Source of the DNA: Malacoraja senta
Taxonomy: Eukaryota
NCBI GenBank assembly: GCA_038087875.1
Contig: CM075977.1
Location: forward strand, 124,558,001-124,622,000
Direction of reading: 5' to 3'
DNA length: 64,000 nucleotides
Below, piece after piece: positions 34,245 through 58,544 of the stretch (the stretch's first letter is position 1; each line of letters opens with the position of its first letter). A program made the position numbers and the translations under genes. The notes below the pieces were generated by a model, which did not search any database, was not told the DNA's origin, and worked only from the letters and a program-made list of their open reading frames with translations.

Positions 34245-34418
34245 ACACAAAGCTGGAGTAACTCAGCAGGACCGGCAGCATCTCTGGAGAGAAGGAATGG
34301 GTGACGTTTCATGTCGAGACTCTTCTTCAGTCTGAAAAGAAGGGTCTTGACCCGAAACGTCATCCATTGCTTCTCTCCAGAGATGCCGCCAGTCCCGCTG
34401 AGTTACTCCTGCATTTTG
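34245..34418. repeat. Head-to-head palindrome of two Penelope hammerhead tails
   Basis: ~85-bp arms centred on ttcag-t-ctgaa (34326-34336); a hammerhead-like core on each strand. Confidence 0.8.
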
Positions 34419-42598: not shown

Positions 42599-42791
42599 CA
42601 TTATCTTTTGAAACAGTGTTTAGCTCCATTCCTTCCCATTGCTGTTCACTTTCTTTTAAATGTTTCCATGGCTTGGCAATAGAGGGTCGAAAGCTAACAT
42701 AAGCATGCCTTCTCCCATATCTTCTCCCAGTGACAGTCTGATAACCTCCTGCTGGTCTCGGCCAGGCTGCTTTTCCAGATTCTTGACCCAT
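42599..42791 (-). CDS. PJA2: Praja-2 E3 ubiquitin ligase, first recognisable coding exon (exon 42599-42793; ATG at 42791)
   Basis: Translates MGQESGKAAWPRPAGGYQTVTGRRYGRRHAYVSFRP, the conserved praja N-terminal motif. Acceptor tttgtag at 42794-42795; donor G|GTTTAT after 42599 (phase 1, matches next exon). An upstream short coding exon may exist. Confidence 0.9.
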
Positions 42792-43671
42792 CACTACAAA
42801 CAAAAATAAAACAATTAGTCCATACTACTCATTCAAAATTATATAACATTTCAGTCTCTTTCCTTTGTGACAAAACAACAATGTCTTGCTCAGATGTCCT
42901 GCAAATTAATAAAGGAAGACACACAATGGGCGTATTTTATATTACAGAAATAAGAGAAGTAAAGGCAACATCTACGTCACAGCCTTTGAGGCAAGTAAGT
43001 TGATCCTTACAGAATTCACAAATAACAACCCAACATTTTGAGATACAGAATAAAATATGCTCTCACTGAATTTATGTGGAATAAAAGTAAATAAATAAAC
43101 ATCTATTTTATTTCAATTTGTGTTTATGGATACACATGAATATTGATGCACAGGTTGACATAGTTTAGGGTTACTTGGGGGGGGGGGGTGGAGGAGGAAA
43201 AAAAAATCACAATGTGGACTAGGCTGTGGGCCGAGGTGCTTTTTCGTTTAAGTTCGTGACCAAATCACGTAACTACCTGAATTTTTACCATATTGTGTAA
43301 AAATATTATAGAAATCATGCCTGAAACTCGTCAAGAACAAAACTCGTACATATTTTTAAAATATGAAAAAACCCTCCAATTTTCCAAGTAGCAATTGTGC
43401 AATCAATGCTCGTTTGACATTGTGTTGGACGGCAATTGACCAATCACGCGCTTTGTTTCATGGTAGCTAGGCAGCGAGCACTCTGGGATCATGGCTGCCT
43501 CCTATTTACATCAAAACAATAGCAAGGTTTCGAAGGAATAAAGGTAATGCTAACCTTGCTGATAATTTTGTTTTACAATTGATTTATCTTTATAAAGTTA
43601 TGATGTGAATAGTTAAATAAAAATGATAAATAAAAATGTAGATCTAGGGTTAGGATTAGGGTCAGACAGAA

Positions 43672-44100
43672 GTCGGTCAGTCGGGCTGTCGGTAGGCCGG
43701 TGGATGCTGTGAAGGGTCGGTCGGGGTGTCGGGCCGCCGGTGAGTGCTGTGAAGGATCGGTTGGGCTGTCAGCCTGCCGGTGAGTGCTATGATGGATCGG
43801 TCAGGCTGTCAGGCCGCCGGTGAGAGCTGTGATGGATCGGTCAGGCTGTCAGGCCGCCGGTGAGTGCTGTGATGGATCGGTCGGGCTGTCAGCACGCCGT
43901 TGTTGCTGCGAAGGATCGGTCGGGCTTCCGGTGAGTGCTGCGAAGGATCGGTCGGGGTGTCGGACGCCGGTGAGTGCTGCAAGAGGTCGGTCGGGCTGTC
44001 GGGCTGCCAGTGAGTGCTGCGAAGGATCGGTTGGGCTGTCGGGCCACTGATGGATGCTGCGAGGGGTCAGTCGGGCTGTCGAACGGCCAGTGTTGCAGCG
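43672..44100. repeat. ~40-bp GC-rich minisatellite, about 10 copies
   Basis: Unit similar to gaaggatcggtcgggctgtcgggccgccggtgagtgctgt. Confidence 0.9.
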
Positions 44101-44469
44101 AATGAGCGGGCGGACTGACGGAGCCGGTGCTCGGGGGGGTGCGGAAGGCAGCCCGGGTGGTGTGCTCCCCACCATCATCACCATGATGATCTAGAAGGGC
44201 ATGCTGGCCAAGTTGGACGCGCTGAGCGGCCACACGTACGGAGCCCGCAGCCAGTCCCAAAGCGGCTCCAGCTATGGGCAGTTCTGGAAGGGGGGGCGAG
44301 TTAGGCTTAGGGTTAGGCACTTTCCTCTCAGTGGAAGATGCCTTAGCCTTCCCCCAGCCTGGCACTACCCCAGCCCCACTACTGCTGTGACCCCCACTGC
44401 AAACTGGCAGTCAATGGGGTTCAGTAAACAGGGGAATCCACAGGAACTGCCCTGTTATAATATATGGCA

Positions 44470-45659: not shown

Positions 45660-47620
45660 AAATTAGCGACGAGGATGGGATAGAGTTTGTGAACTCATCC
45701 TTTAAATACAGTGCAGGACTGTTTTGCAACACGCAGTATTGTTTAACATTTTAAACAGTAAAAACGGAGTTGTGTCGCAGTTGTTTGCGAGCTGGACACG
45801 ATAGGCCGCAGATCCTTCTATGCAGGGGACTGTAGTTTTAAACAGCAGCTGGACAAATCGTCAAGAGTTTGTCAAGCTATCTCTATGTTGTGTCTACGTG
45901 ACAAGATTCCGTCCTTGGGATTGTATAAGATTTTTTTAAATTGAGTTCCTCGAGCTGAATAGCCTTTGTACAGCTAAGTTCTAGGTGAATTGTTACACCA
46001 GAACAGACAGGAAATTGGGGTTTTTGAACGGACTTTAAAAAAACCCAAATAGAACGGCACGATGGCAGCGTCCACGGGCTACATCGGAATCCTTGGCACT
46101 TTTGACAAGAGTAGAGAGCCGTTCCTATATGGAGAGAGCGAACATGTTTTTCACGGCAAACAACATAATGGAGATTAGTGGTGAAGGAGAGATAGTAATT
46201 GAAACAAATAAGGTCATTTGCGAACGCATGAAAGCGATTCTGCTCACGAAGATCAGTCCTGAAGTGTATGGCACACTCGTGATTCTCCTTGCACCCATAA
46301 AGGCAAAAGATGTGCCATTCAATGACATTATGAAGAAGTTGGAGGAGCATTTCAACCCAAAGCCTCTGGAAATAGCATAAAGATATAAATTTGGCACTAG
46401 AAACCAGAAGCAGAATGAGACAATCAATGAGTACATGGTTGCCTTGAAAAACTTAAGTTTACACTGTAACTTTGGAACCTTTCTCAGACGCGCACTACAC
46501 GACAGATTTGTTTGTGTTCTAGTGGATGAACGAATTCAGTCCAAACTCAAGAACACTCCAGATCTTACATTCGAGAAAGCATGCAAGATTGCTACCACAA
46601 TGGAGATGGCATCAAGGAATGCACGCGAGCTTCGTCCACCACGGACTGCAGTGGCCGTTTAGTCACAAGGCAGTGCCTATGGCCAAACCAAGAGGCGCTA
46701 AAGCAAAACCAAAGTACGGCGGGGAGCCGAATTCAGCCAGTTGTTATCATTGCAACGGTAATCACTCATCCTAATTTTGTCAGTTCAAAATGGCCAAGTG
46801 CTATAACTGCCAGAAGAAAGGCCATATTGCCTCAGCATGTCAGGCCAAGCTTAAAACAGGAAACCAACAATCTGCGGGCATCAAGTGACAACACCAGAGA
46901 GGAGTTCACAACTTGGAGGTGAACCCAGATGGAAATGAACTTGGGTTGTACACCATTTATGCAACCAACATCGGTAAGCCTTCAACCAGCCAAGGCAAGG
47001 ACTTTCGAACTAAACTGTTGATTAATGAATAGTTAATTGATATGTGTATTGACACGGCAGCAGATTGTTCAGTCATGAGCAAAGACCTGTATGAAACAAA
47101 GTTCCTACAGATATCATTGTTTGAGAGTAAGGTCAAACTGAGAACCTACTCAGACGAAGTTTTGGAGACATGTGGACAAATGAACTGTAAAGTTCAGCAT
47201 AATGGTCAGTCAGTAAAACTGCCCATCATAGTGGCCAGCTACAGAAATAAACCAACCCTCCTTGGAAAGAATTGGCTGAGTAGAATAGAATTAGACTGGA
47301 AGAACATTTTCAGCATCAATTTGTCCAAATCACGTCTTGAAAACTTCATAAGCAAACATGCAAACATTTTTGCTGATAGTTACATGGGAATAACAGGGTA
47401 CTCTGCACACATTCGACTTAAGCAAGATGTGAGACCTGTGTATTGTCGATCAAGGCCTGTACCATATGCACTAAATCAACAAGTTGAGGAAGAACTCGAA
47501 AAGTCAGAGCGGAATGGAGTACTCGTGACGACAGACCAGAGTAACTGGGCAACGCCAATTGTGGCCGTACCCAAGGCCGACAAAAGTGTTCGACTATGTG
47601 GTAACTACAAAGTCACAATC

Positions 47621-47774
47621 AAGAGCTCTAGGGGTTAGTGGAATCAAGGGATATGGGGAGAAGGCAGGCACGGGTTATTGATTGGGGACGATCAGCCATA
47701 ATCACAATGAATGGCGGTGCTGGCTCGAAGGGCCGATTGGCCTCCTCCTGCACCTATTTTCTATGTTTCTATGT
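47621..47774 (+). mobile_element. CR1 3' end nested in the Gypsy RT region
   Basis: CR1 3'UTR with ttctatgt tail interrupts the ...YKVTI/NQA... sequence. Confidence 0.85.
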
Positions 47775-50423
47775 AACCAAGCCGTTGATGACGAACAATA
47801 TCCGTTACCAACCTTGCAGAACTTAGCGGAGCAAGAGTCTTCACTAAACTGGATTTGTCTCATGCTTACGCCTAACTCAATGTCGACAAGGAAAGTCAAC
47901 GATACTTGACTATCAACACACATAAGGGCTTGTATTCATATACAAAGCTGCCCTATGGTGTGAAATCCTCCTCGAAAATTTTCCAGTCTGTCATGGACAA
48001 AATGTTACAAGGCATTCCGCACTGTGAGTACAACAAGGATGACCTACTGATATTCACAGAGGGCATGGTAGAACATCTGGAAATCCTTGAGCAAGTTCTT
48101 ACACGACTGAACTGCCACAATGTCAAACTGCGACAAAGTAAATGTACATTTGCGCAGTCAGAGGTGGTCTACCTTGAACTCAAAGTAGACGCCAACAGAC
48201 TTCACCCTGTGGAGGCGAAAGTTGAAGCAATAGTGAATGCTCCAAAACCAAACAATGTGTCAGAGCTACGATCATTCCTTGAGATGGTGCAGTTCTATGC
48301 ACGATTCCTTCCAGATTTAGCAACTGTGCTAAAGCCACTACATCATCTGCTACAAAAAGATGTGAAATGGGTGTGGGGAAAAGAACGTGCATATGACATC
48401 TGCAAGGTAAACGTGACAAGTGACAAACTCCTTGTTCACTACGATACAACAAGCGAGACGAAACTTGCTTGTGATGCTTCAAGTTATGGTGTAGGTGCAG
48501 TGATCTCCCACGTAATGAATGACGGACAGGAAAAGCCTATTGCTTTTGCATCCCGCACCCTATCACCGAGTGAATGTAATTATGCACAGATTGAAAAGGA
48601 AGCATTCAGCATCGTGTTCGGAATCAAGAAATTCCATCAGTCTCTTCTCGGCAGACCATTCACCCTAGTGACTGATCACAAGCCACTACTAGTGATGGCT
48701 TGGTCCCAAGTCAGCTATACCGTCCATGGCGGCATCAAGGATGCAGCGCTGGGCAATTTTGCTGTCCCAATATGACTACAAGGTGGAGTACAGAAGCTCC
48801 AAGTGCAACACAGTTGCAGATGCGTTGTCTCGGTTGCCCCATGAGAACTGACGTAGGAAGTGAGAACTCAATCTACATACTGCAAATTGTAGATGAAGAC
48901 TTTCCAGTGACTGCAACAGAAATTGCAGCAGAAACAGAGAAAGTCACTGTGCTGAAGTGGGTCTATGAACGGACATTGAATGGTTGGACTGAAATCGATA
49001 GTGGATTGAACTCAGTTCTGAACTCAGAGCTGAAGCCTTTCCATAATCAACGTCATGAATTATCATGTGAGCAGGGATGCATTAAGTAGGGTTACAGAGT
49101 GGTTGTACCAATCTTTGAGTAACAAAATTATGAATGAACTTCATGCCGAACATCCTTGCAGAGTAAGCATGAAGTCAATTGCCAGAAGTTTTGTGTATTG
49201 GCCTGGTATTGACAGTGACATCGAGTCACTGGTGAGCAAATGTAGTGTCTGCCAAAATTGCCGGAGTAAACCACCAAAATCACCACTGCAACCCTGGTCA
49301 TGGCCAAGTAGACCTTTTCAGAGAGTCCATGTCGATTTTTGCAAAAAGGGTAATGATCACTTTCTGGTACTAGTAGATAGTCATTTCAAATGGATTGAGG
49401 TTAAGCATATGGGATCAAGTACCATATACGAGTTGAGATCCATTTTTGCATGCTATGGTTTACCAGAAGAAAGTTTTTCTGATAACGGGCCTCAGTTTCG
49501 TTCAGAACGGTTCAAAAAGTTAATACACCGGAATGGTGTAAAGCACACACTTGTTCCCCCATACCATCCAGCCTCCAACGGGGTGGCGGAAAGGTCTGCT
49601 AGAGTTGTCAAAGATGCTTTCAAGAAACAGGTTTTGCAGGGTAGTTCACAGCTCAGCATGAAGCATTGTTTGGCTAGTTTCTTGCTGAAGTACAGAACCA
49701 CACAACACACAACGGGTTACTCACCTGCAGAACTGTTGATGAAGAGGCTAAGAATACGCCTGTCTAGTTCAACCCAATTTGGCCTTGAGAATTGAACAAA
49801 AACAGTTGTCAAAAACACCATTTTGACTCCCACAAAAAGGAGAGGTACTTCAAGCCAGATGAGCAGGTTCGTGTTCTCAGTCCTCCCAACAAGTCCAGTT
49901 GAGACAAATGGCATGTTGGGAAAATAGTGGAAGTGTGTGGAGCAAAAAAATACTTAGTTGAAGTTGGAGATAACATCAAAAGTGTGTCTGTTGATCAAAT
50001 GATTCCAGCCAAAGATGAACCAAAAACTGAGCATGAAATCCTAATCCCCGAGTTTTTATCTGAAAGTGAGTTGGAAGAGACCACCATGATTGAAACACAA
50101 AGTTCAGTTAGTTCAGACAAAGAAACAGATTCCTCTGGTCAAAGTCAGGGTACTAAATCAGAGCCAAACAAACCAACAGTTGAGTCAACACCTAAACCTG
50201 TTACACCTGTTACTGTTAGATGATCAGGCAGGATCCGTAAACCAGCAGTCAGATTAGGTTTATAAATTAAGTAACTCACTGTATAAGTAAAATGAAAATG
50301 TGTAATTATGTAAAATAAATCATTAAGATTTCATTTAAGATTTCATAAATACTGGTTTAAATCAAGTATCACAACAAAATTGTAACTGAGTACTTAGATT
50401 TAATACTAAAAAAAGGAGAGCAG

Positions 50424-56335: not shown

Positions 56336-56942
56336 ATTCAGTGGGTTGGAGGCCTATAAGCGAGTCTGGTATTCCGAAAACGCAAGGAATCATGAGATTT
56401 GTCAAAGGTCACTCGCAATAATCACCACAGGCAACCGTGCTGCTACATGCACACAGACCCGCGCACCATCCGTAGCCAGGATCCAACCCGGGCCTCCGGC
56501 GCCGCTGAACTGCCACTGGACCTTCCCCCCTCCTCCGAGCGCCCCATCCCTGTCCGAGGGGACCGCCGGGTTAACCAACAGCACTGGACTGATGGGACAC
56601 CGGCCCGGAGCAGTGGAGCTAGTGCTTCTTTTCCACGCTGGCTGCAAGCCCGAGCCGCCACCTCAACGGGCCGGTCCCCCGCCAGTCCAGGGCCGCCGGT
56701 CAACCCGGCTGGACAGGCAGAGTCGAGCCAGAGCCTCCCCTCCGGCTGCAACCCTGGGCTGCCACTGTAACGGGCCAACCCGGACAGGGAGGGGGACGGC
56801 CCAGCAGCAACTCAACAGTGTCTGCAGCACCGGAGACCCGGGCCCGATCCCGACTACGGACGAAACACAGGTCTGCACTCACGCAGCAGCACAGCCGCCA
56901 AGAATGTTTATCGCGAGTGACCCATGACCTGAAGAACCCAGA

Positions 56943-57035
56943 CTGAAGAAGGGTTTCGGCCTGAAACGTTGCCCATTTCTTTCGCTGCATAGATGCTGCT
57001 GCACCCGCTGAGTTTCTCCAGCATTTTTGTGTACC
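56943..57035 (+). ncRNA. Penelope-derived tail with hammerhead-like motif
   Basis: CTGAAGA-A-GGGT-TTCG-GCCT-GAAA-CGTT followed by the conserved gatgctgctgcacccgctgagtttctccagca tail. Confidence 0.55.
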
Positions 57036-57114
57036 TGGTGTGGCTCCTTAATGTTGCTCGCTCCCATTTTAAGGTAATGCCTCCTATATATCCCTTTGAA
57101 GGTGGGGAAATTCT

Positions 57115-57380
57115 GTGACGGACTGGGTGCTCACTACCACTTTTTGTAACCTTCATTCCTGGCCATTAGAGTTGCCAAACCAGACTGTGATGCAACCAGT
57201 CAATATGCTCTCTACCGTACATATGCAGAGGTTTGAGAGTATCTATCGGCATACCAAACCTCCTCAATCTTCTAAGGAAGTAGAGGCGTTGATGGACTTT
57301 CGTTATGATTGCATCAATGTGTTGGGCCCAAGATATGCATGCCCTGGAACTAGAAGGTGTTTGCTCTCTCCACCAGCAAC
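57115..57380 (-). mobile_element. Rex1/Babar 3' fragment
   Basis: WAQHIDAIITKVHQRLYFLRRLRRFG. Confidence 0.75.
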
Positions 57381-57546
57381 CCAACGAGGAAGATAGATTT
57401 GTGATTTCTTCAGGAACTCAAACCATCCTCCCCCCTTCCCTCCGACACAGACACGGAGCGATCGCCAGCCCCCCCCCCCCCCCCCCATTTTTTGTTTGTT
57501 AAATATCTATTTCTTTGGGCGTTTAAAAAAAAAAATTCCGCCTTAC

Positions 57547-57638
57547 CATTTCTGTACTTTTTCGATAGCTGCCATGATCCGTTTGATGTCATTCTTCACT
57601 CTGCTCCTGGTCTCGGCCCGCACCGATCTTCCGGACAT
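57547..57638 (-). pseudogene. BCL7A: Captured BCL7A first coding exon, copy 1, with splice donor
   Basis: [30 protein letters not shown] plus TG|GTAAGG (92 coding nt). Matches the BCL7 N-terminal domain; KR(V/I)MAA favours BCL7A over BCL7B/C, which have KKVMA. Confidence 0.88.
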
Positions 57639-57878
57639 GCTGTGTGTGTATTTGTTTGGCGGACTCTGAGGGGAGAAGCGCCGGCACCAAGAGCGAGCGA
57701 ACGCGCGGACAGACGGACGAAAGCAAAGATCATAGAGCGGAATAGGTGACATTTCGGGTCGAGACCTTTCTTTGGACTGAGTCAGGGGAAAGAGGAACAA
57801 GAGATATAGACGGTACTAAGGACAAATAAATGGAAGATATGCCTATATCTCCCGTTTCCCTTTCTCTTGACTGTCAGT

Positions 57879-58143
<265 letters not shown>

Positions 58144-58544
58144 TGATCTGCTGATTTAAACCAGCATCTGCAGTTCCTCCCTATACAAGGTATGTGCTGT
58201 TTTCGTCTGTATTAGTGTGAGTCCAGTCAGATTTGGCTTCCAGTCAGATTAACAATCACGCAAGTTTCCATACACACACTTACTTCAGCAAATAGCGACC
58301 AAGGCAGTGCTGACAGTGATGGGGGAAATTGATGAGGGTTTACTGCATTTAAAAAGAAAATTAAAAAAACATTTAAAACATTTAAAAACACACAAACTGT
58401 TCCCCCGCAACGCTCATTACACTGCGAGAGGCATAACTGAGATCGGGTCAGGTTTACTGAAATGGTGGAAGTTATGCTCCGGTGCGTACTACACGTCAGT
58501 CCATTGGATTTCGCAGGAGTGGACCATCTTGCTCCACTCTATGA

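What the first reader, a model, noticed from the sequence alone, without database searches (positions are those of the whole stretch)
57385..57638. Captured BCL7A piece is unspliced, so it is not a processed pseudogene
The minus-strand copy ends AAA TG|GTAAGG after 92 coding nt, splitting the Trp codon where I recall vertebrate BCL7A intron 1 lies. About 160 nt of T-run, G-run and CpG-containing sequence follows, probably BCL7A intron 1. Capture therefore came from pre-mRNA, read-through RNA or DNA. This copy is on the same strand as PJA2 and has an ATG and a strong donor, so it could be exonised. Its phase 2 end does not match the phase 1 start of the 42793 exon, so splicing would create an out-of-frame upstream ORF rather than a fusion protein.
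Basis: partly seen in the sequence, partly recalled or inferred. Interest (0 to 1): 0.7.

Follow-up and report, generated by a model that had tools for sequence, protein, structure and literature searches.

The report
Unspliced BCL7A exon-1 copy in Penelope hairpin
A decaying copy of the first exon of the chromatin gene BCL7A, still carrying its splice-donor signal, sits in a jumping-gene hairpin 15 kb upstream of the PJA2 coding start in a cartilaginous fish; it is not a spliced retrocopy, which fits a transposon class known to carry unspliced host genes, and nothing shows that it is used.

Summary
On the minus strand, ATG 57638 opens 30 codons plus TG, ending at 57547, and GTAAGG follows. 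That is 92 coding nt, the same boundary as human BCL7A (c.92+1). The peptide passes Pfam BCL_N. No later BCL7 exon lies anywhere in the 64 kb, so this is not a spliced retrocopy.

The copy is not a lone capture. It is the longer arm of a ~550-bp head-to-head palindrome. The twin at 58018-58100 (+) stops at codon 28. The palindrome is built on a hammerhead-bearing Penelope-like repeat tail. Penelope-like elements are already known to form such inverted structures and to move intron-containing host genes.

- whether 57345-57546 really is BCL7A intron 1;
- how the fragment was captured;
- whether any transcript splices 57547 to 42793.

The frame arithmetic is right. Splicing would give an out-of-frame upstream ORF that overlaps the PJA2 start codon.

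Earlier unchecked notes of this scan report the same BCL7A palindrome on other DNA of this genome ("dozens of places"). My verdict is an ordinary transposon-borne gene fragment of low interest.

The parts
57547..57638 (-). BCL7A-like exon 1 copy: ATG plus 30 codons plus TG, 92 nt, ending in phase 2. It differs from the canonical peptide at 4 positions (A14V, D16N, V21I, R29Q).
57541..57546 (-). GTAAGG, the 5' splice-site motif directly after coding nt 92. It reads TGG TAA in frame.
   Evidence: Boundary position compared with human BCL7A c.92+1. Many public genomic ORFs of BCL7 genes likewise end at ...KW.
57345..57540 (-). Intron-like stretch with a T11 run, a G20 run and CpGs. It is unique within the window. 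Its origin as BCL7A intron 1 is inferred, not shown.
57100..57342 (-). Decayed C-terminal fragment of a reverse-transcriptase-type retroelement ORF (..QRLYFLRRLRRFG..ESILTGCITVWFGNS..). This is where the unique stretch ends.
57639..57737 (-). About 100 nt upstream of the ATG that both arms share. It is CpG-rich and is the presumed BCL7A 5'UTR.
57738..57780 (-). 5' part of the hammerhead-bearing Penelope-like tail, with a mutated core, joined to the 5'UTR-like stretch.
57781..57873 (.). Centre of the palindrome. It is itself partly self-complementary, so the real loop is about 30 nt.
57874..57916 (+). 5' part of the Penelope-like tail in the right arm, carrying the CTGAAGA...GAAA core.
57917..58017 (+). 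5'UTR-like stretch of the right arm.
58018..58100 (+). Second, inverted BCL7A exon 1 copy. It is truncated in codon 28 and matches the canonical peptide at 27 of 28 residues.
58101..58187 (+). 3' part of the Penelope-like tail. It re-enters the repeat 23 nt upstream of the point where the left junction left it, so a 23-nt stretch is duplicated around the cargo.
42599..42793 (-). PJA2 first coding exon. The acceptor AG lies before 42793 and M1 is at 42791-42789. The 3' end given here is approximate.

Best explanation
The minus-strand piece is a non-functional, transposon-borne copy of the 5' end of BCL7A: about 100 nt of 5'UTR, all of exon 1, the splice donor and probably the first 100-200 nt of intron 1. 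It is the longer arm of a ~550-bp head-to-head palindrome framed by the hammerhead-bearing tail of a Penelope-like retroelement (PLE). Because the donor is retained and no exon 2 follows, the template was unspliced. It could have been a nascent, read-through or antisense RNA, or DNA. This fits the PLE class, which unlike LINEs is known to keep introns and to form inverted 5'-truncated twins by self-priming. The shorter right arm left BCL7A at codon 28 and rejoined the PLE tail with a 23-nt overlap, which is the mark of a polymerase switching templates. What is shown here: the exon boundary, the donor, the absence of exon 2, the palindrome and the PLE-type flanks. What is inferred: that the downstream stretch is intron 1, that a PLE enzyme made the copy, and that the copy arrived at this site ready-made. 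The copy is decaying: the two arms differ at 4 replacement codons against 1 silent codon. It most likely has no role in PJA2.
For: Exon 1 copy and donor. Same boundary as human BCL7A (c.92+1G>C, PMC11068911; donor hotspot of intron 1, PMC11521604). At least 17 public ORFs called on genomic DNA of BCL7 genes end at ...KW. No other BCL7 exon in 64 kb. Palindrome arms 57556-57780 and 57874-58100 are 91% alike, and the RNA fold gives -475 kcal/mol, z -48. In an alignment with cargo-free copies of the same repeat, the cargo interrupts a continuous repeat unit with a 23-nt duplication. A cargo-free palindrome of the same repeat lies at 34246-34418. The repeat consensus carries CUGANGA, an extra base, a G-C-closed helix II, GAAA and a palindromic ACGU, which are the features listed for PLE minimal hammerheads (PMC4209133). 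PLEs form head-to-head inverted copies and move intron-containing host genes (PMC3846280; PMC8557442). The stretch after the donor matches no other repeat in the window.
Against: I could not compare the stretch after the donor with BCL7A intron 1, so only six bases (GTAAGG) are demonstrably intron-like. Rfam finds no hammerhead here, either at gathering score or at E up to 10, and the cores in both arms are mutated. I linked no PLE reverse transcriptase or GIY-YIG ORF to the repeat in this window. No target-site duplication was found around the unit. The left arm has no PLE 3' end, so its outer boundary is undefined. Dispersal of the unit in the genome rests on unchecked notes of other agents.
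Confidence: 0.6

Rival explanations
1. DNA-level origin. A piece of the BCL7A promoter, exon 1 and intron 1 region, already lying next to a Penelope-like tail, was copied as DNA. The route could be fold-back or replication template switching, or passage inside a cut-and-paste transposon. No reverse transcription of BCL7A RNA was involved.
For: A retained donor and intron-like sequence are what a DNA copy would give. There is no poly(A) and no target-site duplication. Palindromes with short overlaps at their junctions also arise by replication template switching.
Against: The upstream homology between the arms stops only about 100 nt before the ATG, at a junction inside the PLE tail. That looks like the 5' end of an RNA, not a random DNA breakpoint. 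The same head-to-head layout occurs without cargo for this repeat and is typical of PLE insertions.
Confidence: 0.2
2. The copy ends at the exon boundary for another reason, for example because it was copied from the free exon 1 splicing intermediate. On this view GTAAGG and what follows are unrelated target DNA that resembles a donor by chance.
For: Only six bases after the boundary can be called donor-like. The rest is unverified.
Against: A chance GTAAG directly at the breakpoint is expected about once in 1000 (4^-5). The in-frame TGG TAA ending matches the ...KW end seen in many public genomic BCL7 ORFs.
Confidence: 0.04
3. The piece is used. Transcription starting in the hairpin or upstream splices 57547 to 42793, giving PJA2 an alternative first exon whose 63-codon upstream ORF overlaps and dampens the PJA2 start codon.
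For: Same strand as PJA2. The ATG has A at -3. The donor matches the consensus at -1 and +1 to +5. There is a strong acceptor at 42793. PLE terminal repeats can hold promoters. CpG observed/expected is 1.19 over 57501-58000.
Against: The piece is 14.75 kb from the acceptor. If both arms are transcribed, 83 of the 92 exon bases and the ATG are locked in a ~270-bp stem, and the donor lies 9 nt outside it. The coding sequence is decaying neutrally. Other copies elsewhere (unchecked notes) argue for a passive passenger.
Confidence: 0.05
4. It is the true first exon of a BCL7 paralogue whose other exons lie outside the window.
For: An intact ATG, ORF and donor at the right place.
Against: All of PJA2 follows on the same strand downstream, and no BCL7 exon 2 lies in 57 kb downstream. 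There are four replacements at conserved residues, and a mirrored, truncated twin lies 380 nt upstream.
Confidence: 0.02

Closest known systems
Penelope-mediated mobilisation of intron-containing host genes (Adineta vaga NRPS and LRR genes; Arkhipova, Yushenova and Rodriguez 2013, PMC3846280)
   Same: Host gene sequence that keeps its intron signals, framed by Penelope terminal repeats. There is a head-to-head inverted repeat with a palindromic junction, and it is explained by self-priming and template jumps.
   Different: Here only a 5' fragment is carried (5'UTR, exon 1 and the start of an intron), not a whole gene. The host is a cartilaginous fish. The frame is a short hammerhead-bearing tail and not full pLTRs. 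No target-site duplication or empty site was found, and intron identity is unverified.
LINE-1 chimeric retrocopies made by template switching (U6/L1 and mRNA/L1 chimeras; reviewed in PMC5470649; bioRxiv 10.1101/2025.02.02.635956)
   Same: The 5' part of a cellular RNA, running up to its 5' end, is fused to the 3' part of a retroelement. The junctions are internal to the element.
   Different: Those chimeras normally derive from mature or spliced RNAs, have poly(A) and target-site duplications, and do not form palindromes. Here the donor is retained and the structure is a hairpin.
Gene-fragment capture by DNA transposons (Pack-MULEs, Helitrons)
   Same: Exon-plus-intron fragments with intact splice signals are dispersed as transposon cargo and can be exonised into host transcripts.
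   Different: The flanks here are retroelement tail sequences, not terminal inverted repeats or Helitron ends.
Classical processed pseudogene
   Same: A dead partial copy of a host gene at an unrelated locus.
   Different: No intron loss, no poly(A), and only a 5' fragment. The defining features were tested and not met.

Membership tests
Processed (spliced, LINE-type) pseudogene | Exon-exon junctions, meaning the intron is removed and exon 2 follows exon 1 | tested here: not met
   Similarity stops at W31, GTAAGG follows, and no exon 2 lies anywhere in the window.
Processed (spliced, LINE-type) pseudogene | 3' poly(A) tract and flanking target-site duplication | tested here: not met
   There is no A-run after the copy. 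No direct repeat of 10 nt or more flanks the unit.
BCL7 family N-terminal region (identity of the cargo) | Match to Pfam BCL_N above the curated cut-off | tested here: met
   41.1 and 45.8 bits against a cut-off of 25. Solved BCL7A chains match residues 1-30.
BCL7A as opposed to BCL7B or BCL7C | Paralogue-diagnostic residues | tested here: inconclusive
   Both copies have K19-R20 as in BCL7A, whereas BCL7B has K-K. With only 31 residues this rests on one diagnostic position.
Penelope-like-element-borne host fragment | Flanked by a PLE terminal repeat or tail carrying a minimal hammerhead core | tested here: met
   The repeat consensus has CUGANGA, an extra base, helix II, GAAA and ACGU, as described in PMC4209133. 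Caveats: Rfam models give no hit and the cores in both arms are mutated.
Penelope-like-element-borne host fragment | The repeat belongs to an element that encodes a PLE reverse transcriptase with a GIY-YIG nuclease | not tested
   No such ORF was linked to the repeat in this window. The assignment rests on the motif, the architecture and unchecked notes.
Penelope-like-element-borne host fragment | Head-to-head inverted, 5'-truncated twin with a palindromic junction | tested here: met
   A cargo-free example of the same repeat lies at 34246-34418. Literature.
Penelope-like-element-borne host fragment | Retained intron sequence homologous to the parental gene | not testable with these tools
Only the donor hexamer is shown.
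Penelope-like-element-borne host fragment | Short target-site duplication or an empty site | tested here: not met
   None was found. The outer end of the left arm is undefined.
Exonised alternative first exon of PJA2 | Reads joining 57547 to 42793 | not testable with these tools
Exonised alternative first exon of PJA2 | In-frame with the PJA2 ORF (fusion protein) | tested here: not met
   92 + 2 nt lie before the PJA2 ATG, which is not a multiple of three. The carried-over frame stops after 32 codons.

The most novel reading that the evidence does not exclude
The BCL7A 5'UTR, ATG, exon 1 and donor module, spread by a Penelope-like element, acts as a portable first exon. At PJA2, and possibly at other host genes that hold copies, it starts or joins transcripts and installs an overlapping upstream ORF or a long double-stranded RNA stem that tunes expression of the host gene.
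Probability: 0.04. Interest if true: 0.6.

Novelty: new member of a known kind. Interest (0 to 1): 0.22.

Why it matters
The piece shows that a dead gene copy lacking exon-exon junctions can still be retroelement-borne. This applies where Penelope-like elements are abundant, as they appear to be in this cartilaginous fish. The same caveat was raised for rotifers: intron presence does not prove DNA-level duplication. Retrocopy counts based on intron loss may therefore miss such copies in these genomes. For PJA2 itself nothing suggests a consequence. A dispersed ATG-plus-donor module is a plausible source of chimeric 5' exons, but that remains untested.

Tried and rejected

2. Parental locus.

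3. A search of 1.84 billion representatives with the 30-residue peptide gave 91 BCL7-family hits. None had an upstream or downstream sequence matching the window copies (best z 2.7). No sister copy or skate parent was recovered that way.

4. Rfam found no hammerhead, at gathering score or at E up to 10. The weak miRNA-like hits only reflect the palindrome centre.

5. I looked for a PJA2 promoter between 42.8 and 64 kb by CpG content. The CpG-rich block at 43680-44129 is a 40-nt-period minisatellite, and the block at 56440-56925 looks like a small inverted-repeat transposon. The PJA2 5' exon was not located, so I cannot say whether the hairpin is intronic or upstream of the gene.

6. The ESM Atlas gave nothing for the PJA2 exon. 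A RING regex found no single-exon RING because the RING is split over two exons.

7. I did not build or search the joined BCL7A-PJA2 spliced model. Only the second exon was translated, by reference, in the carried-over frame.

Full report
**What is there.** On the minus strand an ATG at 57638 opens 30 codons followed by TG, ending at 57547. GTAAGG lies at 57546-57541. The peptide passes Pfam BCL_N at 41 bits against a cut-off of 25. It aligns to residues 1-30 of solved BCL7A chains. Local tblastn with public BCL7 proteins matches aa 1-31 and ends exactly at W31. Arg20, which is Lys in BCL7B, points to BCL7A, but this rests on a single diagnostic residue.

**Is the boundary the real intron 1 position?** A clinical report lists the variant "BCL7A c.92+1G>C" (PMC11068911). 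[quoted passage not shown] Human exon 1 therefore also ends after coding nt 92. Independently, at least 17 representative ORFs called on genomic DNA of BCL7A, BCL7B and BCL7C genes from many animals end at ...KW. That ending is what a TG|GTRAG donor produces. The window copy reads TGG TAA in the same way.

**Not a processed pseudogene.** The sequence after W31 is not exon 2. No other BCL7 exon occurs anywhere in the 64 kb. There is no poly(A) tract and no target-site duplication. A chance GTAAG exactly at the breakpoint would be expected about once in 1000.

**The intron claim.** The ~200 nt after the donor (57540-57345) hold a T11 run, a G20 run and about 8 CpGs. Apart from the G-run they match nothing else in the window at DNA or translated level. 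From about 57342 downward a decayed retroelement ORF fragment begins. This is consistent with a co-captured intron but does not prove it.

**Context changes the picture.**
- The copy is one arm of a palindrome. A second copy on the plus strand (ATG 58018) matches the canonical peptide at 27 of 28 residues and breaks off in codon 28 at 58100.
- The arms, 57556-57780 and 57874-58100, are 91% alike.
- The minus-strand RNA would fold into a ~270-bp stem of -475 kcal/mol, z -48.
- Going outward from the centre, each arm holds the 5' part of a short repeat, then about 100 nt of CpG-rich 5'UTR-like sequence, then the exon.
- Aligned with cargo-free copies of the same repeat (54045, 56943, 27024, 34330), the right arm looks like a continuous repeat unit interrupted by the BCL7A cargo. 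A 23-nt piece of the repeat is duplicated at the two junctions, as expected from two template switches.
- The repeat consensus carries CUGANGA, an extra base, a G-C-closed helix II, GAAA and a palindromic ACGU before the cleavage C. These are the features listed for the minimal hammerheads of Penelope-like elements (PMC4209133). Rfam's hammerhead models do not score it, and both arm copies are mutated.
- A cargo-free head-to-head palindrome of the same repeat lies at 34246-34418.

**Comparison with what is known.** Penelope-like elements are described as forming inverted 5'-truncated twins with palindromic junctions. [quoted passage not shown] An unspliced host fragment inside such a hairpin is therefore a known kind of event, here seen in a cartilaginous fish and limited to a 5' fragment. 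The long arm cannot derive from the short one, because it holds codons 29-31 and the donor. The short arm is therefore the secondary copy.

Unchecked notes of this scan (s1-140609, s1-200014, s1-200065) report the same BCL7A palindrome at other loci of this genome. If that is right, this copy arrived ready-made and the capture did not happen at PJA2. I could not verify this here.

**Host gene and the exonisation idea.** The large exon 36876-35815 is 71% identical to shark Praja-2. All later exons map on the minus strand. Public PJA2 proteins start at M1 = 42791, 2 nt after the acceptor at 42793. The two bases before the ATG are 5'UTR, so the exon has no true coding phase. I did not build the joined model. 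Translating the PJA2 exon by reference, in the frame carried over from a phase-2 end, gives a stop after 32 codons.

Nothing shows that such splicing happens. Three points argue against use:
- the piece is 14.75 kb from the acceptor;
- the ATG and 83 of the 92 exon bases sit in the stem if both arms are transcribed, with the donor 9 nt outside it;
- the coding sequence is decaying neutrally, with the arms differing at 4 replacement codons against 1 silent codon.

I could not locate the PJA2 5' exon. Whether the hairpin is intronic or upstream of the gene is therefore open.

**Verdict.** "Not a processed pseudogene" is supported. Intron identity, capture route and exonisation are untested. The best explanation is a decaying Penelope-type hairpin carrying an unspliced BCL7A 5' fragment (confidence 0.6). 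It is ordinary for this element class and of low interest.

Noticed in passing
window 57639-57737 and 57917-58017: The 5'UTR-like part of the two arms differs at only 3 of about 100 positions and keeps about 16 CpGs in both arms. The adjacent exon has 6 differences in 83 nt and the repeat parts differ more. CpG observed/expected over 57501-58000 is 1.19. Possible causes are arm-to-arm gene conversion, hypomethylation or constraint; none was tested.
   Followed up: partly
window 34246-34418: A cargo-free head-to-head palindrome of the same hammerhead-bearing repeat: 82-nt arms, 85% alike, 9-nt spacer. It shows that the hairpin layout is generic for this repeat.
   Followed up: partly
window 43680-44129: A CpG-rich minisatellite with a period of about 40 nt and about 10 copies, 0.9 kb upstream of the PJA2 start exon. 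It mimics a CpG island in composition profiles.
   Followed up: partly
window 56404-56925: A GC-rich ~520-bp block (65% GC) bounded by short terminal inverted repeats (GGTCACTCGC.ATAA type, seen by eye), with internal inverted repeats. It looks like a small non-autonomous DNA transposon inserted next to a Penelope-like tail copy at 56938-57045.
   Followed up: no
window 13510-16116 (-): A nearly full-length non-LTR retrotransposon ORF, with an endonuclease (Exo_endo_phos_2) followed by a reverse transcriptase (RVT_1), lying inside a PJA2 intron.
   Followed up: partly
window 47042-49795 (+): The pol region of an LTR retrotransposon (aspartyl protease, RT, RNase H, integrase) in several broken ORFs.
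   Followed up: partly
window 58125-58187 (+): The Penelope-like tail after the right arm appears to have an internal deletion between two CCAGCAT motifs, when compared with other copies in the window.
   Followed up: no
window about 21150-22500: Long masked or N stretches interleaved with a CT-rich simple repeat.
   Followed up: no
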